64,000 bases of DNA from Guillardia theta CCMP2712 (Eukaryota > Protista > Cryptophyta). This document shows positions 10,877 through 21,648 of the stretch, piece after piece. The position numbers and the translations under genes are program-made. The notes under the pieces were generated by a model, which did no database searches, was not told where the DNA came from, and was given only the letters and a program-made list of their open reading frames with translations. The stretch's first letter is position 1; every line of letters begins with the position of its first letter. Where the stretch lies: assembly GCF_000315625.1 (NCBI RefSeq), contig NW_005434673.1, positions 62,001 to 126,000 of the forward strand, given 5' to 3'.

Positions 10877-13567
10877 ATGGAGCAAGACTGGGTGATGGTT
10901 GGGAAATCGAAGAAACATCACAAGAGCTCGGAGGGTAAGAAGGACTTTCACATGCACAGATTGTTAACTAGACGATTATGCAGGAACAAGGTCGAAAGGG
11001 TCTAATGCGTCACAACACCCGGCCGCCTTGAATGTTGTAAATAATGAGACCTCGGTGCCTTTGAAACCGATCAAACTATCTCTCAATGCCTCCGACCACA
11101 CCGTCGTGGAAGGAGCTGGGGATGACGATGTGACTTCAAATCCAATCAGAGATCGTGAAGAAGAGGGGCATGCACGCATCCATGCTTCCGGGAGATGTTC
11201 CCCGTCCCCAGACCCGTTAGCTATGACTCTTCCCATCAAACCTCACGAAGCTAACGGAGAGAGCTCGGAGGAGTCGTTAAGACCCGAGCCGGAAGGGGCG
11301 GAGAGTGAACCAAGTCCACAGAGCGGTGAGCAGACGGTGTTGTGAATACATTCACTGACTGTGTGTCAGGCCATCTCCCTTCTACTTCTCCATCGCTATC
11401 AGGTGGGAAGCGAGCAGAGGAGGTCGAGAGTTTGGGTACGTCGCTTTTTGGAGGGCACCCTGGAGGGCACCGGAAGGTTTTTCATCTTCGTGCAGGCTCG
11501 CCGAGTAGTGAGCCTCCTCCTCCTGCCATTGCTCCAGCGATCCGACAGGAGGGAGCCAGCGGGGCTGTGAACGAGGGTACACCGGGGACTACTGAGAAGA
11601 AGGTCAAGGTAAGCGATGCACAGCTGTGTCCGGGGCCAATCTTACCTGTCTATCTACCATCTTGTCGACAGCACAAGTCTGGACTTAACTTTCCGCTACA
11701 TCCCACCAGCTGGCCACCAAAGAGCCTCTGCATGGGATCGGACAAGCTCATGACGCTGCCAAACGTCCGCTTCCCCTTGCAGAAACCCCCGTCGTCAGCA
11801 AGCCATCTGAAACAAGCTGCATTGAAATACTTCTTGATCACCAACGTGAGCAGGCCGTGGATAGATCAAGGTCTGTTATACATTTTTCTTCTCTGCCTGG
11901 CCTGTTTGTGATCTCTCGCCCGCTCCTCCCTCTGCTTCTTATCCGATCAGTTTTCTAGTCCTCTCGTCCCTTTGCTGATCGTGGCTATGCTTCGCGTCTT
12001 CCTGTTTCTCTGTCTCTTGCTCTCTCATCTTCACTCCTCTCGCTTGTTCATGTATCTGCCCGCAGGACCTCGATCGTTGCAGCAGGACAGCGTGCTCGTT
12101 GACGCCATCCGCGCTCAGACTCCTCTCATCATCATCTGTGATGGACATGGCTCCATTTCCCTCCTTGACAAGGAGCCTACCGAGGTCCCTGGGGACATCA
12201 AAAACTTCTTGCATGTTGGGGGACGACAAGCTGCCGAGATTTGCAGTCAGACTATCTTGCAGTTCATGAACAAGGTGTGATAGGAGGAGGAGGAGGAGGA
12301 GGAAGAGGAGGAGGATTTTAACTCGTATTAGTATGCAGATGAATTCTCGCTGCACAAGGCTGACGAATTCTTTCATCGGGCATTCTCCTCCGCTCACTCG
12401 ACTGTGCTGAATCAGATCTTCATGGGGACAGAGAAAGATCCTGACGGGCAGCCTGCGAGGAAGGACATGAGCGCGCTGGACGGGACGTACTTCAGTCACA
12501 GCCTCAACAAGTGGCTGCAGCTCGTCCCGAGGAGCAGCGCGATCAACGCGGTCGTCTCCAAGGAGCTCCTCCTCCTCCCCGACGGCTCGCAGTGTCCCTT
12601 CTACAGGAGAGCCAACGGGTCGTGGGAGCACGGAGAGTTCGGCACTACCTGCACAGCCTGCGTCATCCTCAATGCAGCCGACGAGATCAGACCCTACCGC
12701 AAGGTCTGTGTGACCGGAAACGTGGGGGACACAGACGCTTGCCTCTTCCGCTTCAGCTCCGCCATGGCAGGACAGCGTGCAGTGCTAAAGTTTGGGCTGT
12801 GGCTGACGAAGGAGCACTCGCTGTACTCCCGGGAGGAGCGGGAGCGTCCCTTGGAGGCTGGCGGCGTGCTGTCGGACTACGAGGGAGGGGAGGGGATCAA
12901 GTTCAAGCTCAAGGTCGACATCGACATGCCCCAGGGAGGGAGGAATGCTGTGGCATACGAGCCGACAAGGGGTATCGGGCACGCCATCGGACAGTTCCGG
13001 GGGATCATTCCTTCGCCCTCCATCTCAGTGGTAGAAGTAGAAGACGGTGAGTACCACCCTCTGGCTTGCTCTGCTGTCCTGTCTTGTCTTTTCCATGCTC
13101 TCACCCTTCATCTCAGCTTTCCTCTTCTCCCCTCCCCCTCCCCCCCTCCACCAATCGCAACATCATGCGTTTCCACATGTCAGGTTACCACTCCTCACCT
13201 CATCCTGAGATTGTACGCAGGGGATATTATCGTGGTTGGTACGGACGGGCTGTGGAATGCGTTAGGGGGGAGGAGAAGACCAGGAGACACGAGGGAACTG
13301 GGCGAGGAGATGGAAGGAGTTCTGCTTGCAAACATGAAGAAATTCTTCCAGCTGCACAGAGAGAAAGACCCGCAGGCGATAGGTGGAGAGCTCATGAACT
13401 TGGCAAAGGTGAGGAGGAAGCGATCCATGGGGCTGGTGATGACGATGCGAACAGAGGAAAGGGCTGCAGGATAATGCAAGTCTTGCTGTGGTGAAGATTA
13501 CTTCATCGGTAAGTGGAGGAGAAGGGGGAAAGAAGGGAGCAGAATGGAAAGAATGCGGAGACGATGA
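10877..13567 (+). CDS. PP2C/PPM-family protein phosphatase with long disordered N-terminus
   Basis: Motifs in order: QQD, IICDGHG, GGRQAAE, GTTCT, GNVGDT, LTKEH, TRGIGH, IVVGTDGLWN, DNASLAVV. Multi-exon; both ends approximate. Confidence 0.85.
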
Positions 13568-13702
13568 CGAATATGGGAGGGAGGAGGGTGCGAATGAGGG
13601 AGAGGAGAGCGAGGAGGAAATGAGGGAGCAGATTCTGATGACACAACACAGGGGATGATGGTAAACACGTGAAGTTGTGCAATCTACATGTATATACAAC
13701 AT

Positions 13703-16657
13703 TTACATCTGCTCGTGTGCTCTCCCTCTCGCTCCTCCCGTGTCCTCCTCTGACTTGCTTGACTCCTCCTCTCCTCCTCCTCTCCTCCTCCTCCTCCTCC
13801 TCCTCCTCCTCCACGTCATCATTGAGACTGTCGTGCTTGGCTGTTGAATCCGAAGCCGTTGAAGACCTGCAGTCAACATCAGAGAAGAACCAAGAGAAGA
13901 GGGAGAAGTCAGGCTGGGGCTAATGAAGAAGGAAAGGCGGAGAGAGCGCGGGCTGACCTGGTTGAAGGAGTTCTCTAGGGAGGAGGGATCAAGGTAACTC
14001 GGTAAGAAACTCTGGTGAAGTTTTCGCATGCTGCTGCTCCTGGAGCCAAGGAAGCCGTCACTCCTCCCAGGTGTGCTGCCGCGCCGTGCGGTCAACTGCA
14101 AGGTGGACGTTCTACTCTCCTTCCTCGTGCTGTCTCTTGCTGGCAGCAGGTGGGCTGGTTGCGGTTGCTGCAGCGTCTCGAAGCTCCCAAGGGTCTTGCC
14201 GTGCTTGCCCTGCAGGAGGCGATTGAGGCTGTCAAAGCTCTCGGCTCCTCCTCCAGCCCTCCTGTAGCTGGCCGTGAGCTCGTCCACTCTTTCCAGCTGC
14301 GAAGGAGCCTCTTCCTCATAGAAGGTCTTGAGTAGAGCTCTCACCGCTGCCACCTCATGCTCCAGCCTCTCAGATCCAGCGCCCGCAGCCTGGTGGGTAG
14401 AGGGGGGAGGATCGGCCTTGGCCTCCTCCCTACTTGTGGTGGGCTGACTGCCGTTGAAGATTGAGGAGACGCCGAGCTGGTTCTTGATCTCTGCGATGAG
14501 AGGATTGTTGCGAGGAGCAGGACGTAATTTCTGTTTCTGTTCTCCTCCCGTCAACCTGGCGAGCTCTTCCTGCATCTTCTCCTGCATTGCCCTGAGCGAT
14601 TCCTCCATTCTCTCGCAGATGTTGTGCTCGAGCTGTTGCATCCTGGCCTCAAGCATGGACGGGAGGTCCTCCATCCTCGAGCTCGTGGTGGAGGAGGAGG
14701 AGCGGGAGTCGTACAGGTAGTTGTCCTGGAGCTGAACAAGAACAGACTTGAGGACGAAGAGGACTGTGCTGTTCCAACCGGGTCCCTCCTCCTGCATGGC
14801 GTTAAAGATGTGTCTCTGCATGAACTCAAAGATCTGCATCCGAATGGCCCTCTCAAACTCTTCGCGGTTGAGGGCCAGCGTCTCATCTCCGCCCCCGGCG
14901 CTCTTGAAGAATTCCTTCACGTCCTGGTTTGACATCTTGATCGTCGGGTACACGGGGATCAGCGTCACTCCCGCCTGCAACTCTGACCGTGAGATGCAGC
15001 CGACGTTCTTGATATCAACAATGCCAAAGATCGTGTCGATCCTTCTCGTCAGCTCCTGTTGAGAATCGTAGATAGACAGGGAGGACAGGAGCGGGTCCAG
15101 GCTGCGGATGTCCTTGACTCTGCCGTTCTTCTCGATACGCTCGAGGAGGAGCTTCTGCTTCTCCCTCTCCGAGGCGGAGGTGAAGTTGTCGAGGAGCACG
15201 GCGACAACCACCTGCAGCAAGATCCACCCCACGACAAGGATGAAGGAGATGAAGAAAAGTCCTCCTGTCAAGCTCGGCACTTGATTCCCGTTGGAGTCAA
15301 TGGCTCCGGGATAGTCGAACGCCCATCCGTCCGACATGCCTGCGGCGATGGAGAAGAGAGAAGTGAGGGAGAGCGAGAAGCTGCTGAAGTGCTCCGGGTT
15401 CTGCTGCCCGAAGAAGCCGACAGCCAGGATGGCGTACATAGCAGAGATGAGGGTGAGGATGACGAAGGCGTTGAGGACAGGAATGAGACTTCCTATCAGC
15501 GCGTTGATGATGAGCCTGAGGCTCTTCAGCCGTCCGAACAGCCTCACGACTCGGAACGCACGCATCATACGAAGAACGTTGACACCTGGAAGGTTCTCAA
15601 CAGCGAACACAAGCAGTGATCCAGCAACGATGAAGATATCGAAGAGGTTCCAGCCGCTGGTGATGAAGGGCCAAAACCAGTGAGCAAACGCGTTCACCAC
15701 CAGTTCCAAAGTAAAGAATATCGTGAAGATAAGATCGAACGTATCGAAAAGCTTGCTGACATGAGACCCTGGCGAATTCGCCACCTCGCTCTGTATGGCA
15801 TTGCAGAGAAAATTGAGAAGGATGAGGGCAACAAAAAATCCCTGGACAGCCGTGTGGTTGTAAAACAACCTTATCTTCTCTTGCAATAGGCCGATCTGGT
15901 TCTTGGAGACATAGATATGAACATGATTCGCCTCAGTTATCGTTGCCTTCAACACTCCCATCCACTCCATGCAAGCCTGCGGATCGTCGAGTTTGATCTC
16001 GAAAGACTTCCCCAGACATCTGCTGTTCTTCTTCGTGATGATTTCTAAGACCTTGGTGTCGACATCATTCAATGCGATGAATGAAAGTAAGTCAGATCGC
16101 ATGTTACCAGGAAGGTTGTACTTGGACTTATTGCTAGACGCCTCTTCCAGAAAGTGAGCGAACTGCTCGAAAGTGAAGTGCTCACAATCTTCATCCCCGA
16201 TCATGGAGAACAAATAATCCATGTATTGATCTGAGCAATTCATCGACAACTCCACAAATACTGCTCTCATCTCGGCCTTGTCCAATGTCCCAGAATGGTT
16301 CGTATCCCATCTGTCGAAGATCTCCTTCCATCGTGACAGAATGCTCGCTCTATTCTCGACGAAAGGCTCGATCCTCCCACGACGGACTCGATAGATGTCG
16401 TTCAGTACAATATCTTCTTCTACAGCGCCGTTCTCGTCGTACATGACGAGACGCTTGTTTGTAAACAACATCCTGCACGTCCTCCACGATTTATCATGGC
16501 ACCGCACCTGCACCATACCTTCCTTCACCACAGCCGACGAATTGAGGGAAAGCAGAGACGTAGAGAAGTTCATGAACGACCCTGATCGCTTCATGGTCGA
16601 CATTGTCTTCCTCATCTTCCCTGCCGTCTCTTCACTCGGCGGCGACGCCGCCGCCAT
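13703..16657 (-). CDS. Single-domain (1x6TM) voltage-gated Na+/Ca2+-type channel (EukCat/BacNav/CatSper-like) with split PH domain, EF-hands and coiled coil
   Basis: S2 FTIFFTLE, S3 GWNLFD, S4 LRMMRAFRVVRLFGR, pore PEHFSSF..SLFSIAAGMSDGW, S6 VVVAVLLDNF. EF-hand DTNHSGTLDKAE and a post-S6 EF-like pair. A possible intron near 13935 may change the C-terminus. Confidence 0.9.
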   Translation of the reverse strand: MAAASPPSEETAGKMRKTMSTMKRSGSFMNFSTSLLSLNSSAVVKEGMVQVRCHDKSWRTCRMLFTNKRLVMYDENGAVEEDIVLNDIYRVRRGRIEPFVENRASILSRWKEIFDRWDTNHSGTLDKAEMRAVFVELSMNCSDQYMDYLFSMIGDEDCEHFTFEQFAHFLEEASSNKSKYNLPGNMRSDLLSFIALNDVDTKVLEIITKKNSRCLGKSFEIKLDDPQACMEWMGVLKATITEANHVHIYVSKNQIGLLQEKIRLFYNHTAVQGFFVALILLNFLCNAIQSEVANSPGSHVSKLFDTFDLIFTIFFTLELVVNAFAHWFWPFITSGWNLFDIFIVAGSLLVFAVENLPGVNVLRMMRAFRVVRLFGRLKSLRLIINALIGSLIPVLNAFVILTLISAMYAILAVGFFGQQNPEHFSSFSLSLTSLFSIAAGMSDGWAFDYPGAIDSNGNQVPSLTGGLFFISFILVVGWILLQVVVAVLLDNFTSASEREKQKLLLERIEKNGRVKDIRSLDPLLSSLSIYDSQQELTRRIDTIFGIVDIKNVGCISRSELQAGVTLIPVYPTIKMSNQDVKEFFKSAGGGDETLALNREEFERAIRMQIFEFMQRHIFNAMQEEGPGWNSTVLFVLKSVLVQLQDNYLYDSRSSSSTTSSRMEDLPSMLEARMQQLEHNICERMEESLRAMQEKMQEELARLTGGEQKQKLRPAPRNNPLIAEIKNQLGVSSIFNGSQPTTSREEAKADPPPSTHQAAGAGSERLEHEVAAVRALLKTFYEEEAPSQLERVDELTASYRRAGGGAESFDSLNRLLQGKHGKTLGSFETLQQPQPAHLLPARDSTRKESRTSTLQLTARRGSTPGRSDGFLGSRSSSMRKLHQSFLPSYLDPSSLENSFNQVSPRSLRLSFFISPSLTSPSSLGSSLMLTAGLQRLRIQQPSTTVSMMTWRRRRRRRRRRGGGEEESSKSEEDTGGARGRAHEQM

Positions 16658-19128
16658 GAAGGTAGACTTCGTGAACTGGATAAATGTGCACCGTTTTTGG
16701 GGGGTGGGGGGGGGGGGGTCGGAGGTCTTCGAGTTCCTTTGGGTACTGTTGGCTAAGTAGGGGTCCCTGTGAGTTGAAAACTCAAATGTAGTCGAAACGT
16801 GGGGTACTTTGTACTAAAAGGATGGGTGAGTAAGAAAAAAATCTTCTTTCGAAGGGTCTTTAGCTTATCAATGGGGTTGTAAACCGGGGGGGTGGTTTGT
16901 GCACCCCTTCTAGTTTTAACTTCCCATGGACCCCTAGGGATATAGGACCACTAGTATCCTTCCATACGGATTCCAGACCCTACCCCTACCTATATATGTA
17001 CCGTACCATTGCTTTCGCTGTATATTTATTCCGTGGTGTACCCTACCCCCTCCGTATCCCTTTCCAAAGGAGTTGTTTTTCCGTCACTTTACATGGAGGA
17101 CCACCCCTGTCACTCCTTTGAACCTGGATTTGTCAGACTCGATTTGGACGGGTGTGAATTACTTTCATACCGGTCATTTTCATACATCAACCAGTCACTT
17201 GAGATAGGTAGGGTGTTTAATGCTATGGGTGGGTGAGCTATGAATGGGTGAAGGTGGGGTGGTAACTGCTTTACCTTTGGCATTGCCCGCCCCTATTTTT
17301 ACCCCTCCGTCACCGAAGGATCAGATCCACCCCACCCACCCACAGGATCAAATGCTCCACCCTACCCTACAACTCTCAATAAAAAGGCGGAAAATCCTAA
17401 CGACCCAACCCCTGCTCAACGACTTGGAAGGTACTAGTGGTCCACCCCTACCATCACCACCACCTCACTACCCCCCAATTAAGACATATTCGGTACCCAC
17501 CTGCTCCAAAAGTAAACAAATACCACCCACCCCACCTGTGGTACCTCGGGACACTGCTCTGTGACCAACAAGAACCGACCACCCGGTGACCTCTTTCTCA
17601 CTACCCTACCACCTCTTTGACCCGACTCCAGAGCCCCGATGACCGGTAATGATTAATCCACGTACCAAACATAAATCCGTGTTTTTTTTTCTTTTTTTTC
17701 CCGGGTTGTTTCCTAAAGGCATTGGTTAGTTCCGTCTGCAGAACAATCATGGCGAGGGAAATACCGGGAAGGGCGGCGGGAAGGCTACGATCATCAACTT
17801 AGCTTGAGGGTTGCGAGTAAGCTCGCCACAAACACTTTCCCATGGCTGAACATGCTAGGAAAGATACTTGCTTCAAACGACAACATGATGAAGGGAGCGG
17901 GGAAAGTCATTGCTGAACAGGGCACATGCACGACTGAAACAAAATCCCACAATCCAGCACCTGCAAGCTAGGGTACTTCTCATCGACCTCTTCAAGTCCG
18001 ATTGTACATTGATTGATCATGTCAAACCCTGTAAAGATCGCAGTCTTCATGTTGCTGCGACACGGACAATCGCAATTTTCCAGCAAAGACAGGAATGGCT
18101 CCCGCAGCAAGAGTTACATTTGGATCAAGAGTTACATCTGGATCAAGAGCTCTTAGATGACATCGATGGTGTTCTTCCTGTATTGCAAGCTGCAATTCAG
18201 AGCTGAGTTGGGATGAAACCCCTCAAACCCACCACCCACCCCTATCAGAAGCTCGTCCACTCGGCTCTCGCCTTCGTGCCCTGATTCCTTCCTCCCTTCT
18301 CCGTCTACTTCCCCCTCTCCCTCCCTGCATCTGTCCCCTCATGTCATGATCCTATGTACAGGTTGTGCAGGGCTCCATTTCATAAACGTTCGAACAACGT
18401 CTGAATGAAGATGATTGTGATGAATAGTATTCATCACCACAGAACTTGTACGCCCATACAATAAACACCTTTCTCACTTTAATGATTCTCTTCATGTCTT
18501 ATATTAAAAGTATACATCATGGTGCATTTGTCTGCTAAACTGATATCTTGTGTCACGTGTGTTGACAGCAAACACCAGGCATTGAGCAGGTGGAAACTTG
18601 GAGTTATTTTGTGAGTCTTTCAAACAGGCGAAGTTTGAAACCAGCACGAGATAGAGAGAAGGTTCATACCATGAAGCAAACATGTCAACGAAGCTCAAGC
18701 AATCCTAAGCAACAGGTGCCATGATGTCACATGAGCACTCGGCACTTCCGAACTTCGGAAGCGAAGACTTGAACTTTCGAAATGCTAGGGCCCCGGGGCT
18801 GCGGCGGGAGGACGACAGAAGGTGCGAGAGCAGAGATCGGAAGGAGCAGGAGGAGCAGGGCAGAGAGGGGACAGGACGTGGTAGGGAGTGAGAGCAGGAG
18901 AGGGAAGCAAGCAGTCAGTGCTGCCAAGTTGTGGGAACTTGAGTCGGAGGCCGCGTAGCTATGACGAGTAGCGAATTGGAGGCAAAGAAGGATGTGCGGT
19001 ATGAGGGGCAAAGCCAGCACTAGGAGCGAAAGAGGGAGGGGAAGGAGGAAGAGGGAAGGAGTTGGAAGGGGAGGGAAAGGGGAGCTGAACATGGTGGGTA
19101 CAGCAGAGAGAGAGGAGGAGCAGGTAAC

Positions 19129-21648
19129 ATGATGATACAGCAGTCGGTACACCATCTCCTCCACTACCACCTCTGCCTCCGCCTCTTCATCCTCCTCCTG
19201 CTTCTCAATGTGTCCAGCTCGTCTAGGCGGTGCAAGCCCGGAAGTCACGAACACGCTGCTGGCTACATACAGGCTGGAGCAGAAGCTTATGATAACGGCA
19301 AGCTGGATGCTGCTGCTTCCTGCTTCGAGCTGGCAGCGAGGGTGAACCCTCAGGACGGCCCCTCATCTGCAGTCGCGCTGTCCAACCTCGCCACGGTGAA
19401 GAGAGACCAGGGAAGAGTTGGGGAGGCGCTCGAGCTCATGAGGGACGCGCGGAAGATGGCGCCCGAGGACGCAGAGACAGCGTTCCTGCTGGGGAAGATG
19501 CTGGGGGACGCAGGACAAGGAAAAGAAGCGATCCTCCACCTCGAGCACGCGTGCCATCAGGATCCCTCACACTTCCGCGCCTGGTCGCAGCTGGGGGTGG
19601 AGCTGGACAAGGCTCGAGAGCACGCACGGGCCCTGCTGATGTACGAGCAGGCGGTCAAAGTGAAGGAGGACTACCTCACGGCCAAAGTTCAGATCGCGCT
19701 GGCAGCTGGAAACCTGCAGGACTGCGAGCGGTCGCGGCGGATGGGACGAGAGGCGCTGGGGGGCATCAGGGGGGAGGTGCCGTACCTGTCCGCCCTGGCG
19801 ACCTCCTTCAAGCGATGCGGCGACAGAGAGGGCGAGAGGGAGGCTTACTTGCGCGCCCTCCTCCTCCATCCAGGAGCGATCTTCGAGGTCGGAGGGGAGA
19901 AGAGGACGGTAGAGGAACGGTTCGCAGCTTTGCTGGCGGAGGAAGGAAAGCATGGCGTAGCCATCCAGTTCCTTGAGAAGGCGAAGAGGCAGAAAGAGCA
20001 CCATGCTCCTTCGCTCCTCTCGCTCCTCGGCTTCTGTTACAGTCAGTTGGGAAGCAGGTTCTATCCTGAGGCCATGGCGGCGCTGGAGAAAAGCTGCCGA
20101 CTCTACGAGAGTCTGCGGGGGGAGGAGAGGAAAGAGCTGGGGCCTGTGCTGGGGAACCTCCTTCGCCTTAAGTTTGTGACGGGCAACTGGACACGCTTAA
20201 ACTTCTTCCTCTCTTCCTTTGCGAGGATAGCGAGGGAGAGCTCTAGAGCTGAGGCTCCTCCTCCCTCGAACCCGGTCTTCGTGCTCGCCTACCCTGTGGA
20301 CGACAGTGTCCTCCTCAGCATTGCCATGCTCTACGCTAAGGGACAGCGCCAAAAGTTTGCTGGCGCTACCTCACTGCCCCTCCCCCGTGCCCCCGACCTG
20401 CTCGAGCTCCCAGCGGGCAAGAAGCTGACGATCGGCTTTCTGGCTCCCGGACAGGGCAATGGGGTAGGGAGCCACCTGGCCTCCTGGTCATTCTGGCAGC
20501 ACTGCAAGCAGAGCTCGAGGATCAGCTGCGTGCTCTTCTCGGACAAGGATGAGGGCGAGGAGGGAGGGAGGAGGGAGGTCGAGCATGTGCAACTGACTGG
20601 AGAGCTGAGGAGAGACGCGAGCTCGTTGATCAGCAAGAGGTTTCACGTTCTCCTCGACATTTTCGGACACACTGAGGGCAGCAGGCCGGAGCTGCTCCTC
20701 TCCTCCTCCAGCCTGCCTCCTGTCAGGATGCAGTTCTACGGGTACGAGGGGAGCTATGGAGACCGGGACCTCTTCCCCTTCCACCTTTCCGACTGGGCAA
20801 CAGCGGCTGTGGACGCAGCTGCTCCTCCTGCTGACCCGACGGCAGCGACACCCGGGATGTTCGTTGAGAAGCTCGTCCTCCTTCCTCCTTCTAAGTTTCC
20901 GAGCGGTGCGCTACCAGCAGCAGGAGACTCGCTGGATGAGGAGGAGGAGCGAAGAATGGAGCACATGCTGTTCGGAACGGAGGGTCACTGGAGGAGGAAC
21001 GAGACGTTCGTCTTCTGCAGCTTCGCCAAGTCCTACAAGCTCCACCCCCGCCTCTTCAAGACCTGGGTCTCCATCCTCCTCCGCTCTCCCAACTCCATCC
21101 TTTGGCTGCTGAGCTACCCCGACGGCTCCGACCTTGCTCGCCCGCGGCTCCGGGAGCACGCAGAGAGGATGGGGCTCGATCCAGCTCGGCTCGTGGTCAC
21201 AGGCCTGCTTGAGAGGAAGAGGCACCTTCTGCTCAAGGGCACCTTCGCCCATCTCCTCCTCGACTCCTTCCCTTACAATGGGCATCTCACCACAGCAGAG
21301 GCCCTCGCCGCCGGCATTCCCGTCCTGGCCCTCCCTCAGACTCGCCCGGCCTCCCGCCTCAGTTCCAGCATGTTAGCTGCCCTGCAGCTGCACCCGAGAC
21401 TTGTAGCTCGCGACCTGGAGGACTACGAGGAGCTCGCGGTCAGGATCGCATCGAGCTGGAACAAGAATGTGACGCACTCGTGGTTTGCGGAGACGAGGGA
21501 GGAGCTCAGGAGGAGGCGAGCAGTAGGAGAAGGTTTCTTCGACTCCAGGAGATACGCGGAGAAGTTTTCGCAAGCCATGAGCATGACGTGGGATCTGGAG
21601 GAGAACAGCGAGACGTTGGGGAGACGCTTCCACGTGATCTGCAACTGA
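19129..21648 (+). CDS. TPR-containing GT41 glycosyltransferase (OGT/SPINDLY-like) with signal peptide, intronless
   Basis: Multiple TPRs, then LLDIFGHTEGSR, VFCSFAKSYKL, WVSILLRSPNSILWLL, LDSFPYNGHLTTAEALAAGIPVLAL and ASRLSSSML, all typical of GT41. Hydrophobic leader LRLFILLLLLNVSSS. Confidence 0.9.
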   Translation: MMIQQSVHHLLHYHLCLRLFILLLLLNVSSSSRRCKPGSHEHAAGYIQAGAEAYDNGKLDAAASCFELAARVNPQDGPSSAVALSNLATVKRDQGRVGEALELMRDARKMAPEDAETAFLLGKMLGDAGQGKEAILHLEHACHQDPSHFRAWSQLGVELDKAREHARALLMYEQAVKVKEDYLTAKVQIALAAGNLQDCERSRRMGREALGGIRGEVPYLSALATSFKRCGDREGEREAYLRALLLHPGAIFEVGGEKRTVEERFAALLAEEGKHGVAIQFLEKAKRQKEHHAPSLLSLLGFCYSQLGSRFYPEAMAALEKSCRLYESLRGEERKELGPVLGNLLRLKFVTGNWTRLNFFLSSFARIARESSRAEAPPPSNPVFVLAYPVDDSVLLSIAMLYAKGQRQKFAGATSLPLPRAPDLLELPAGKKLTIGFLAPGQGNGVGSHLASWSFWQHCKQSSRISCVLFSDKDEGEEGGRREVEHVQLTGELRRDASSLISKRFHVLLDIFGHTEGSRPELLLSSSSLPPVRMQFYGYEGSYGDRDLFPFHLSDWATAAVDAAAPPADPTAATPGMFVEKLVLLPPSKFPSGALPAAGDSLDEEEERRMEHMLFGTEGHWRRNETFVFCSFAKSYKLHPRLFKTWVSILLRSPNSILWLLSYPDGSDLARPRLREHAERMGLDPARLVVTGLLERKRHLLLKGTFAHLLLDSFPYNGHLTTAEALAAGIPVLALPQTRPASRLSSSMLAALQLHPRLVARDLEDYEELAVRIASSWNKNVTHSWFAETREELRRRRAVGEGFFDSRRYAEKFSQAMSMTWDLEENSETLGRRFHVICN

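What the first reader, a model, noticed from the sequence alone, without database searches (positions are those of the whole stretch)
15940..16540. Voltage-gated channel with an EF-hand pair inserted inside a split PH domain
Seen: PH strands 1-5 (VVKEGMVQVR..WRTCRMLFT..LVMYD..EDIVLNDIYRV), then a canonical EF-hand (DTNHSGTLDKAE) and a degenerate partner, then PH strands 6-7 and the Trp helix (LEIITK..GKSFEIK..MEWMGVL) just before S1. A second EF-like pair follows S6. Inference: Ca2+ binding could switch phosphoinositide or partner binding of a homotetrameric 1x6TM channel, making it a voltage/Ca2+/lipid coincidence detector.
Basis: partly seen in the sequence, partly recalled or inferred. Interest (0 to 1): 0.75.

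Follow-up and report, generated by a model that had tools for sequence, protein, structure and literature searches.

The report
Channel with EF-hand-split PH domain
A cryptophyte alga (Guillardia theta) encodes a one-domain voltage-gated cation channel whose N-terminal PH domain is split by a calcium-binding EF-hand pair, a domain nesting I found described nowhere, although its lipid-sensing role is doubtful.

Summary
Window 15940-16540 (minus strand) encodes residues 40-240 of Guillardia theta GUITHDRAFT_98923. This is a single-domain 6TM voltage-gated cation channel (Ion_trans E 4e-35, four to five S4 arginines).

Residues 43-95 (strands b1-b5) and 199-251 (b6, b7 and the Trp helix) form one PH domain in an AlphaFold2 model built on a family alignment (pLDDT 92-94 in both halves). 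Solved PH domains match it: ARAP3 Z 14.8, rmsd 1.5 A, 94 of 98 residues; TAPP1 TM 0.79. The ~100 residues between the halves hold an EF-hand pair (Pfam E 5e-10): one canonical loop (D118-E129) and one degenerate loop.

The protein belongs to a family of PH + channel + C-terminal-EF proteins that the papers I searched do not describe. Every named member is a cryptophyte, and Guillardia has at least six paralogs. Their b5/b6 loop varies from 23 to 131 residues. Only this protein and its Hanusia phi ortholog carry an EF-hand there.

The "lipid coincidence detector" reading is weakened. The b2 basic residue is K/R in all 14 other family members but Cys here. Calcium feedback on gating through the PH module is the likeliest function, and it is untested. 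Verdict: a new variant of known kinds.

The parts
13958..16657 (-). Exon 1 of GUITHDRAFT_98923 (residues 1-900)
   Evidence: ORF. 100% identical to P0001. Transcript contigs cover 13825-16652 without a joint in this exon.
13867..13957 (-). 91-nt GT..AG intron near the 3' end
   Evidence: The joint is spliced in run X2. The sequence reads CAG|GTCAGC...GCAG|GTC. It explains the 984-aa ORF versus the 915-aa annotated protein.
13819..13866 (-). Exon 2 (last 15 residues and the stop)
   Evidence: Translates to VFNGFGFNSQARQSQ*, the C-terminus of P0001.
16538..16657 (-). N-terminal basic, probably disordered leader (residues 1-40), with MRK..TMKRSGSFMNFS conserved in Hanusia
   Evidence: Alignment. 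No Pfam hit. Low pLDDT in the single-sequence model.
16373..16531 (-). PH domain N-half, strands b1-b5 (residues 43-95)
   Evidence: Pfam PH profile positions 1-54, E 0.022. Family half-HMM E 1e-22. AF2 pLDDT 92-94. Aligned to solved PH domains.
16064..16372 (-). Insert in the b5/b6 loop (residues 96-198): EF-hand pair plus one extra helix (184-196)
   Evidence: Family alignment A5 and loop lengths. AF2 helices at 101-120, 127-136, 143-153, 163-174 and 184-196, pLDDT 66-76.
16151..16336 (-). EF-hand pair (residues 108-169)
   Evidence: PF13499 E 5.4e-10, 39.9 bits, above the cut-off. More than 260 EF-hand proteins hit this part in phmmer.
16271..16306 (-). Canonical Ca2+-binding loop D118-T-N-H-S-G-T-L-D-K-A-E129
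   Evidence: Read from the sequence. Ligand positions 1, 3, 5, 7, 9, 12 are D, N, S, T, D, E, with Gly at position 6. Conserved in Hanusia as DTNKSGTLEKSE.
15905..16063 (-). PH domain C-half: b6, b7 and the C-terminal helix with W232 (residues 199-251)
   Evidence: In Hanusia, Pfam PH profile positions 63-104, E 1e-3. Half-HMM E 1.5e-21. AF2 pLDDT 85-94. T208, G216, K/R217 and W232 are conserved in the family.
15857..15898 (-). Pre-S1 helix (residues 254-267) linking the PH helix to S1
   Evidence: AF2 model. The family profile matches NavEh residues 73-103 here.
15161..15847 (-). Single voltage-gated channel domain S1-S6 (residues 271-499)
   Evidence: PF00520 E 3.6e-35, one stretch. PDB hits to Nav/Cav repeats, NavEh and NaChBac/NavAb.
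15515..15571 (-). S4 voltage sensor: R363, R366, R369, R372, R376, K378, R381
   Evidence: Sequence and family alignment.
15317..15340 (-). Selectivity filter G440-M-S-D443-G-W445-A-F447, with two extra residues (M-S) relative to the family consensus TG-DGW
   Evidence: Channel-domain alignment.
14843..15040 (-). Degenerate EF-like pair after S6 (residues 540-605)
   Evidence: PF13499 E 6e-4, 20.5 bits, below the cut-off. 25.2 bits in Hanusia. Paralogs have an EF-hand at the same position.

Best explanation
This is GUITHDRAFT_98923 of the cryptophyte Guillardia theta, a single-domain (1x6TM) voltage-gated cation channel. It is presumably tetrameric, like BacNav and NavEh. It belongs to a family, cryptophyte in every named member, whose cytoplasmic N-terminus carries a PH domain. 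That domain joins S1 through its own C-terminal helix and a pre-S1 helix. The C-terminus carries an EF-like pair. In this ortholog group (Guillardia and Hanusia) the family's hypervariable b5/b6 loop of the PH domain has taken up a calmodulin-lobe-like EF-hand pair. One of its Ca2+ loops is canonical and the other is degenerate. That makes it a split PH domain of a kind not described before. Shown here: the gene model, the channel domain, the EF-hand pair, homology of both flanks to the PH domain of paralogs, and a predicted single PH fold. Inferred: cytosolic Ca2+ binds D118-E129 and moves the EF lobe against the PH sandwich. This changes how the PH module contacts the membrane face or the channel's own cytoplasmic parts, giving Ca2+-dependent feedback on voltage gating. 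The Ca2+ may enter through this Asp-filter pore. The canonical phosphoinositide pocket seems to have been given up in this lineage (C61, V51). Ca2+ may therefore have replaced lipid as the input rather than joined it.
For: Identity and gene model. Channel: Ion_trans E 3.6e-35, a single stretch. PDB sequence hits include single-domain NavEh 7x5v at E 7e-24. S4 arginines and the Asp filter. EF pair: PF13499 39.9 bits, above the cut-off, with a canonical loop. PH: the two halves hit complementary parts of PF00169, positions 1-54 in Guillardia and 63-104 in Hanusia. Paralogs have a contiguous PH above the Pfam cut-off: P0166 45.9, P0168 39, P0264 32.8, P0154 26.2 bits. The family profile finds solved PH domains at E 1.7e-7, in two stretches. 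The AF2 model with alignment A5 has mean pLDDT 79.6, and 92-94 in both halves. The Foldseek top 50 are all PH domains, TAPP1 at TM 0.79. VIA-align gives ARAP3 PH Z 14.8, rmsd 1.5 A, 94/98 residues aligned over model residues 4-208. The ESM Atlas's own model gives the same result: 105 residues aligned to a 112-aa PH domain, TM 0.84. The insertion is derived: the loop is 23-131 aa across the family and holds an EF-hand only here, and the focal pair is nested in a supported clade of N-terminal-PH channels (98/96). Pocket loss. Precedent for Ca2+ dependence in a relative with a C-terminal EF pair: EhEUKCATB1 (bioRxiv 10.1101/2020.04.29.068528).
Against: There are no functional data of any kind. 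The PH fold is a prediction, and the alignment behind it is made mostly of paralogs with contiguous PH domains, which biases it towards that fold. The single-sequence model was uninformative (pLDDT 46). The focal protein alone is below the Pfam PH cut-off (15.7 bits), and phmmer of either half against PDB finds nothing significant. The EF region has only moderate confidence (pLDDT 66-76), and its orientation on the PH domain is not reliable. One functional EF loop may bind Ca2+ weakly. Tetramer formation, ion selectivity and any coupling of the PH module to gating rest on analogy. Loss of two pocket residues does not exclude lipid binding at a non-canonical site.
Confidence: 0.6

Rival explanations
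1. The split PH domain binds phosphoinositides, Ca2+ binding to the inserted EF-hand switches that binding, and the channel integrates voltage, Ca2+ and lipid.
For: The fold matches lipid-binding PH domains (TAPP1, ARAP3, AKT). Basic residues remain near the b1/b2 loop (R52, K56, R59, R62). Known split PH domains act together with their inserts (PMC3216653).
Against: The b2 basic residue is K/R in 14 of 14 other family members and Cys here and in Hanusia. The b1 Lys is Val (position assigned through the PH consensus alignment). By general knowledge, most PH domains do not bind phosphoinositides specifically. A shared fold shows no function.
Confidence: 0.15
2. The EF-hand pair is a tolerated passenger in a permissive, hypervariable loop. 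The PH domain serves trafficking, anchoring or assembly, and neither controls gating.
For: The b5/b6 loop takes 23-131 residues of mostly low-complexity sequence in relatives, so the site is permissive. The second EF loop is degenerate.
Against: The insert is 70-75% identical between Guillardia and Hanusia, with the Ca2+ loop ligands kept. The PH helix runs straight into the pre-S1 helix, a position suited to coupling. The N-terminal PH is kept across deep branches of the family.
Confidence: 0.2
3. The two flanks do not form one PH domain. The apparent split PH is an artefact of weak profile matches and of a model biased by its alignment.
For: The focal protein is below the Pfam PH threshold. 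Single halves find nothing in PDB. The single-sequence AF2 model was poor.
Against: The two halves match complementary parts of the same profile. Both align column by column with the contiguous PH of paralogs. Two independent predictors, ESMFold in the Atlas and AF2, give a full PH fold.
Confidence: 0.04
4. A gene-model artefact: an unrecognised intron or a fusion of neighbouring genes creates the apparent nesting.
For: Guillardia genes often have introns, and the raw ORF overruns one at its 3' end.
Against: Transcript contigs from three studies cover 13825-16652 and 15861-16622 with no joint, while the same runs show spliced joints nearby. The Hanusia transcriptome protein is collinear.
Confidence: 0.01

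Closest known systems
EukCat single-domain voltage-gated channels, especially EukCatB (EhEUKCATB1 = NavEh, PDB 7x5v/8j7h)
   Same: One 6TM Ion_trans domain, S4 arginine ladder, acidic filter residue before Trp, EF-hand pair after S6. The host group is one said to carry EukCatB (cryptophytes; PMC6509283 and bioRxiv 10.1101/2020.04.29.068528).
   Different: It has an N-terminal PH domain, which those papers do not mention. The filter is G-M-S-D-G-W-A-F: Asp rather than Glu, and two extra residues, against TGESWSE. I did not place it in a tree with reference EukCatB sequences.
The six described split PH domains (PLC-gamma, syntrophin, myosin X, Rho kinase, Vps36, PIKE; PMC3216653)
   Same: A PH sandwich interrupted in an inter-strand loop, with the two halves still forming one fold. 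The loop is the same one as in PIKE (b5/b6).
   Different: The insert is an EF-hand pair, whereas the known inserts are SH2-SH2-SH3, PDZ, PH, C1, zinc fingers and an NLS. The host is an ion channel. The fold is predicted, not solved.
Paralogous PH + channel + EF proteins of cryptophytes (GUITHDRAFT_134639, _114473, _101696, _109050, _104223; Hemiselmis, Cryptomonas, Rhodomonas, Hanusia)
   Same: The same N-terminal PH, pre-S1 helix, channel domain and C-terminal EF-like pair.
   Different: Their b5/b6 loop is 23-131 residues with no EF-hand, and they keep the b2 K/R that is Cys here.
PLC-delta type PH + EF-hand proteins
   Same: A PH domain and EF-hands in one polypeptide, linking lipid and Ca2+ signalling (general knowledge).
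   Different: There the domains are in tandem, not nested, and the protein is an enzyme.
Channels gated through cytoplasmic N-terminal or Ca2+-sensor modules (KCNH PAS domain, CaM/EF-hand regulation of Cav/Nav, the NavEh N-helix; PMC9114117)
   Same: A cytoplasmic module next to S1 or S6 that tunes voltage gating. This is an analogy for how it may work.
   Different: No homology of the sensor modules. Nothing has been tested here.

Membership tests
Voltage-gated ion channel superfamily (Pfam Ion_trans PF00520) | Six-TM domain matching the profile above the curated cut-off | tested here: met
   121.7 bits against a cut-off of 25, residues 271-499, profile positions 4-240 of 241, one stretch.
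Voltage-gated ion channel superfamily (Pfam Ion_trans PF00520) | S4 with basic residues at every third position | tested here: met
   R363, R366, R369, R372, then R376, K378, R381. They align with S4 of relatives.
Voltage-gated ion channel superfamily (Pfam Ion_trans PF00520) | Voltage-dependent ion conduction | not testable with these tools
   Needs electrophysiology.
EukCatB clade | Groups with reference EukCatB sequences in a phylogeny | not tested
   No reference EukCatB sequence was held as a file. There is only a PDB sequence hit to NavEh (87 bits) and a match of the pre-S1/S1 profile.
EukCatB clade | BacNav-like filter with Glu (TGESWSE in EhEUKCATB1) | tested here: not met
   The filter is GMSDGWAF, with Asp and a two-residue insertion (reference motif).
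EukCatB clade | Single-domain channel of haptophytes, cryptophytes or pelagophytes | tested here: met
   Guillardia theta is a cryptophyte, and there is one Ion_trans domain.
PH domain (PF00169) | Profile match above Pfam's cut-off | tested here: not met
   15.7 bits against 25.1 for the focal protein, and 20.0 in Hanusia. Paralogs aligned column by column reach 26-46 bits, and the family profile finds solved PH domains at E 1.7e-7.
PH domain (PF00169) | Seven-stranded b-sandwich capped by a C-terminal helix bearing the conserved Trp | tested here: met
   In the AF2 model only. Z 14.8, rmsd 1.5 A to the ARAP3 PH; TM 0.79 to TAPP1. W232 is conserved in the family.
PH domain (PF00169) | Basic b1/b2 pocket for phosphoinositide binding (defines a functional subset, not the fold) | tested here: not met
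   C61 where 14 of 14 relatives have K/R, and V51 where most have K.
Split PH domains | A folded domain inserted in an inter-strand loop while the halves form one PH fold | tested here: met
   Predicted only. The insert is residues 96-198, between b5 and b6. The definition and the six known cases come from PMC3216653.
Split PH domains | Experimental structure of the reunited halves | not testable with these tools
   Needs NMR, crystallography or cryo-EM.
EF-hand pair (PF13499) | Profile match above the cut-off | tested here: met
   39.9 bits against 30, residues 108-169.
EF-hand pair (PF13499) | Canonical 12-residue loop with ligands at positions 1, 3, 5, 7, 9, 12 | tested here: met
   EF1 D118-E129: D, N, S, T, D, E with G123 at position 6. 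EF2 fails in every register and is not conserved at its first Asp.
EF-hand pair (PF13499) | Ca2+ binding | not testable with these tools
   Needs a binding assay.

The most novel reading that the evidence does not exclude
In one cryptophyte lineage a channel-attached PH domain exchanged its regulatory input. It lost the family-invariant lipid-pocket Arg/Lys (now C61) and took up a Ca2+-binding EF-hand lobe in its b5/b6 loop. An ancestral lipid-sensing gating module would thus have become a Ca2+-operated one. This would be the first natural EF-hand-split PH domain and the first voltage-gated channel gated through a PH domain.
Probability: 0.25. Interest if true: 0.72.

Novelty: new variant of a known kind. 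Interest (0 to 1): 0.55.

Why it matters
Single-domain voltage-gated channels of algae (EukCats) are recent models for how fast Na+/Ca2+ signalling evolved outside animals. Their cytoplasmic regulation is barely known. This report adds two things.

First, there is a family of such channels with an N-terminal PH domain fused to S1. It is cryptophyte in all named members, and I found it in no paper of the searched library.

Second, one lineage has an EF-hand pair nested inside that PH domain. That would be a seventh kind of split PH domain, with a Ca2+ sensor as the insert.

The paralogs in the same genome have a plain PH domain and keep the lipid-pocket Arg, so nature has supplied the controls. 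Swapping loops and pocket residues between paralogs would test directly whether a PH domain can gate a voltage-gated channel, and whether Ca2+ or lipid is the input. The compact PH-EF-PH module could also interest designers of Ca2+-switchable membrane-binding domains.

Tried and rejected
1. AF2 on the single sequence (residues 1-263) gave pLDDT 46 and was unusable.

2. Alignments A4 and A6 mixed PH relatives with EF-hand fragments. They put the paralogs' PH halves onto the EF region and were discarded. Only A5 was used.

3. phmmer of residues 30-262 against 1.84 billion representatives found the whole module only in its own cluster. All other hits were EF-hands. Five hits that seemed to reach into the PH strands were plain multi-EF-hand or unrelated proteins.

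4. The own-genome search with the module found only itself. The paralogs' PH is too divergent for that search.

5. phmmer of each PH half alone against PDB gave nothing significant.

6. I asked whether the insert is a duplicate of the protein's own C-terminal EF pair, or of the N-terminal EF pair of EF+channel relatives (P0192, P0221, P0311). Neither fits. Its best matches are small calmodulin-like proteins (39 bits) against 13-18 bits for the channel EF pairs, with no hit to its own C-terminus. This comparison used a biased set.

7. Supplementary tables of the EukCat paper are not held, so I could not check whether this gene was in their list.

8. The one run on record as RNA raw reads (X14) gave only 22 reads, mostly at a repeat. 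Expression level is therefore unknown.

9. The earlier-findings look-up returned nothing near this place.

10. I did not fold or scan a construct with the insert cut out and the halves joined. That needs a joined sequence that has no reference.
Full report
WHAT IS AT THE COORDINATES

Window 15940-16540 lies inside one long minus-strand ORF, 13703..16657, 984 codons.

The product is 100% identical to hypothetical protein GUITHDRAFT_98923 of the cryptophyte Guillardia theta CCMP2712 (P0001, 915 aa). The raw ORF and the annotated protein differ only after residue 900. There a 91-nt GT..AG intron (13867-13957) is removed and a short second exon (13819-13866) supplies VFNGFGFNSQARQSQ*. A transcriptome-derived ortholog from Hanusia phi (P0002) is 74% identical and collinear over the whole length.

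IS THE GENE MODEL SOUND IN THE REGION THAT MATTERS?

Contigs of three public runs from three studies were laid on 13300-17200. The runs are only guessed to be RNA. They do carry spliced forms of the neighbouring gene (joints 13406/13453 and 13507/13651, GT..AG). Run X2 also carries the spliced form of this gene's own 3' intron.

Contigs cover 13825-16652 (X1) and 15861-16622 (X2) with no joint, no differing letters and no gaps. Together with the collinear Hanusia transcript, this shows that the PH-EF-PH stretch is one uninterrupted exon present in mRNA. It is not an intron read-through or a fusion.

The one run on record as RNA raw reads gave too few reads to say anything about expression level.

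THE CHANNEL

Pfam finds one Ion_trans domain, residues 271-499, E 3.6e-35. Against PDB sequences the best matches are the individual repeats of animal Nav and Cav channels. The next best are single-domain channels:
- NavEh from Emiliania huxleyi (7x5v/8j7h), E 7e-24
- NaChBac/NavAb constructs, about 1e-21

S4 carries R363, R366, R369, R372, then R376, K378 and R381.

The pore loop reads G440-M-S-D443-G-W445-A-F. The family consensus is TG-DGWAS. This protein and its Hanusia ortholog therefore have Asp at the high-field-strength position and two extra residues (M-S) before it.

In EhEUKCATB1 the filter is TGESWSE, and changing its Glu to Asp made the channel pass Ca2+ and Ba2+ (bioRxiv 10.1101/2020.04.29.068528). 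A Ca2+-permeable pore here is an inference from that result, nothing more.

THE EF-HAND INSERT

Pfam EF-hand_7 (a pair) matches residues 108-169 at E 5.4e-10, 39.9 bits against a cut-off of 30. I searched residues 30-262 with phmmer against 1.84 billion representative proteins. All hits other than the protein's own cluster were EF-hand proteins aligned to this part.

The first loop, D118-T-N-H-S-G-T-L-D-K-A-E129, has the canonical ligands at positions 1, 3, 5, 7, 9 and 12. It has Gly at position 6 and a hydrophobic residue at position 8. It is kept in Hanusia as DTNKSGTLEKSE.

The second loop (about 154-166) fits no canonical register, and its first Asp is Lys in Hanusia.

The insert resembles small calmodulin-like proteins (39 bits) more than the N-terminal EF pairs of EF+channel relatives (13-18 bits). 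It shows no match to the protein's own C-terminal EF-like pair. That comparison used a biased set.

The C-terminal EF-like pair is at residues 540-605 and is sub-threshold: 20.5 bits here and 25.2 in Hanusia. Paralogs have an EF-hand at the same place.

DO THE TWO FLANKS MAKE ONE PH DOMAIN?

Taken alone, the focal sequence gives weak evidence:
- Pfam PH matches residues 43-89 to profile positions 1-54 at E 0.022.
- phmmer of either half against PDB finds nothing significant.
- A single-sequence AF2 model was useless, pLDDT 46.

Four further lines make the case.

(i) In the Hanusia ortholog, Pfam PH matches the other flank: residues 199-242 to profile positions 63-104, E 1e-3. The two flanks therefore hit complementary halves of one profile.

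(ii) The protein has many relatives with a contiguous PH domain at the same distance from S1. The Pfam PH scores are P0166 45.9 bits, P0168 39.0, P0264 32.8 and P0154 26.2, all above the 25.1 cut-off. Both flanks of the focal protein align column by column with these. T208, G216, K/R217 and W232 are conserved. A profile of that alignment finds solved PH domains by sequence, in two stretches: PLEKHA6 at E 1.7e-7, and also centaurin, PLEKHA7, SKAP55 and TAPP1. It also matches NavEh for the pre-S1/S1 part.

(iii) AF2 with alignment A5 gives mean pLDDT 79.6. The two halves score 92-94 and 85-94, and the insert 66-76. The predicted elements are:
- b1 43-52, b2 58-66, b3 69-73, b4 79-84, b5 88-95
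- five helices, 101-196
- b6 199-208, b7 218-222
- the capping helix 226-251
- a pre-S1 helix 254-267
- S1 269-289

The Foldseek top 50 PDB matches are all PH domains: TAPP1 at TM 0.79 by target, evectin-2 at 0.76, AKT3 at 0.75. Their alignments span about 205-220 columns for targets of 103-120 residues, so they bridge the insert. VIA-align against 48,161 representative chains gives the same answer:
- ARAP3 PH: Z 14.8, rmsd 1.5 A, 94 of 98 residues aligned over model residues 4-208
- TAPP1: Z 14.7
- AKT: Z 13.9

(iv) The ESM Atlas holds its own ESMFold model of this protein, made without my alignment. Its residues 38-248 align 105 residues to a 112-residue PH protein, TM 0.84 by target.

The caveat is that these are predictions, and alignment A5 consists mostly of proteins with unsplit PH domains.

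FAMILY AND HISTORY

Every named member of the N-terminal-PH channel family is a cryptophyte:
- Guillardia theta, at least six genes: 98923, 134639, 114473, 101696, 104223, 109050
- Hanusia phi
- Hemiselmis andersenii
- Cryptomonas curvata
- Rhodomonas salina

Many further members come from unnamed environmental assemblies. The Atlas lists clusters of 219 and 65 members that combine Ion_trans with PH.

Using half-domain HMMs, I measured the distance between b5 and b6 across the family. It ranges from 23 to 131 residues. It is 104 in the focal protein and 103 in Hanusia. In all the others the loop is polar, low-complexity sequence with no EF-hand (Pfam).

In a maximum-likelihood tree of the channel domains, the focal pair sits inside a supported clade (98/96) of N-terminal-PH channels. 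Further PH-bearing lineages branch outside that clade. Channels with an N-terminal EF pair and no PH form a separate clade.

The simplest reading is that the PH domain is ancestral to this group and the EF-hand pair is a later capture into its most permissive loop.

No other instance of the nested module turned up in three searches:
- 1.84 billion sequence representatives
- the rest of the Guillardia genome
- a shape search of Atlas cluster representatives, where no match aligned more than 137 residues

PH sequences diverge fast, so these blanks are weak evidence of absence.

THE LIPID POCKET

In the consensus alignment to solved PH domains, the family motif "..ekRgs..kkWqeRr.." lines up with the usual PH pattern "K..(loop)..W-x-x-R". 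From general knowledge, that b2 Arg is the residue whose change to Cys abolishes phosphoinositide binding in BTK (R28C) and AKT (R25C).

In alignment A5 this column is K/R in all 14 other family members that cover it. It is Cys (C61) in the focal protein and in Hanusia. The b1 Lys column is Val (V51) here and Lys in 11 of 16 sequences.

R52, K56, R59 and R62 remain, so some membrane affinity or a non-canonical site cannot be excluded. Still, the one lineage that gained the EF-hand is also the only one that lost the invariant pocket residue.

HOW IT MOST LIKELY WORKS

Shown:
- a transcribed gene for a single-domain voltage-sensor/pore protein
- a bona fide EF-hand pair with one canonical loop
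- both flanks homologous to the PH domain of paralogs
- a predicted single PH fold, with the insert in the b5/b6 loop
- a continuous helical path from the PH capping helix through a pre-S1 helix into S1

Inferred:
- The channel is a tetramer, by analogy with BacNav and NavEh, which would give four PH-EF modules under the voltage sensors.
- Ca2+ binding to D118-E129 rearranges the EF lobe against the PH sandwich. This alters how the module contacts the membrane face or the channel's cytoplasmic parts.
- The outcome is Ca2+-dependent feedback on gating.

EhEUKCATB1 has an EF pair after S6 and needs Ca2+ for its current. That shows Ca2+ dependence exists in this class of channel, but it says nothing about a PH-borne sensor.

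My confidence estimates:
- the architecture: about 0.9
- the Ca2+-feedback mechanism: about 0.35

COMPARISON WITH WHAT IS KNOWN

A 2011 structural paper counts six split PH domains and gives their insertion sites (PMC3216653):
- PLC-gamma, syntrophin and myosin X at b3/b4
- Vps36 and Rho kinase at b6/b7
- PIKE at b5/b6

The known inserts are SH2-SH2-SH3, PDZ, PH, zinc fingers, C1 and a nuclear localisation sequence. An EF-hand pair is not among them. My searches of the held library for split PH plus EF-hand returned only PLC reviews, where the two domains are separate.

The two EukCat papers describe coiled-coil, ion-transport and EF-hand parts and never mention a PH domain. No paper in the library holds both "EukCat" and "PH domain". 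Some database entries are auto-labelled "PH domain-containing protein", so the PH part is visible to pipelines but is not discussed.

I file the protein as follows:
- a member of the voltage-gated ion channel superfamily
- a member of the EF-hand family
- a member of the PH fold by prediction and family profile, not by Pfam's own threshold
- a new variant among split PH domains

I do not file it as EukCatB. Its filter differs, and I did not build a tree with reference EukCatB sequences.

WHAT WAS LEFT OUT

I did not make or search a construct with the insert removed and the two halves joined, because such a joined sequence has no reference.

Noticed in passing
window 15317-15340 (-), residues 440-447: The selectivity filter of this protein and its Hanusia ortholog has two extra residues (M441-S442) before the Asp, relative to the family consensus TG-DGW. 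The effect on pore geometry and selectivity is unknown.
   Followed up: partly
window 16475-16477 (-), residue C61 (also V51): The b2 position that is K/R in 14 of 14 other PH-channel relatives is Cys in the two EF-hand-bearing orthologs. Loss of the invariant pocket residue coincides with gain of the EF insert.
   Followed up: yes
window 13867-13957 (-): The 91-nt 3' intron is spliced out in a contig of run X2 but retained in the 2865-nt contig of run X1. This is either intron retention or unprocessed RNA. If translated, the retained form gives the low-complexity tail with a poly-Arg run seen in the raw ORF.
   Followed up: partly
P0261, P0262, P0315, P0335 (environmental relatives): Some close relatives of the channel domain carry a PH domain far downstream of S6 and the EF-hand, for example P0261 PH at 519-619. 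These sequences are cut at the N-terminus, so they may have two PH domains.
   Followed up: no
P0165, P0183, P0196, P0203, P0198 (relatives): Other single-domain channels in this radiation carry further cytoplasmic domains in their precomputed Pfam lists: C2 (PF00168), SAM (PF00536/PF07647) and PA14 (PF07691). The group seems to shuffle signalling domains freely onto the channel.
   Followed up: no
window 16538-16657 (-), residues 1-40: The N-terminal leader has a basic motif, MRK..TMKRSGSFMNFS, that is strictly conserved between Guillardia and Hanusia. It has no family match. It could be a phosphorylation site or an inactivation particle like the NavEh N-helix. Untested.
   Followed up: no
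window 19129-21648 (+): The neighbouring intron-free ORF of 839 aa is a TPR + glycosyltransferase family 41 protein (O-GlcNAc transferase / SPINDLY-like): PF13844 E 1e-36 plus several TPR families. It is unrelated to the finding.
   Followed up: partly
window 13300-13711: A highly expressed neighbouring gene shows two short GT..AG introns (13407-13452 and 13508-13650) in contigs of three runs. Its depth is 20-40 times that of the channel gene.
   Followed up: no
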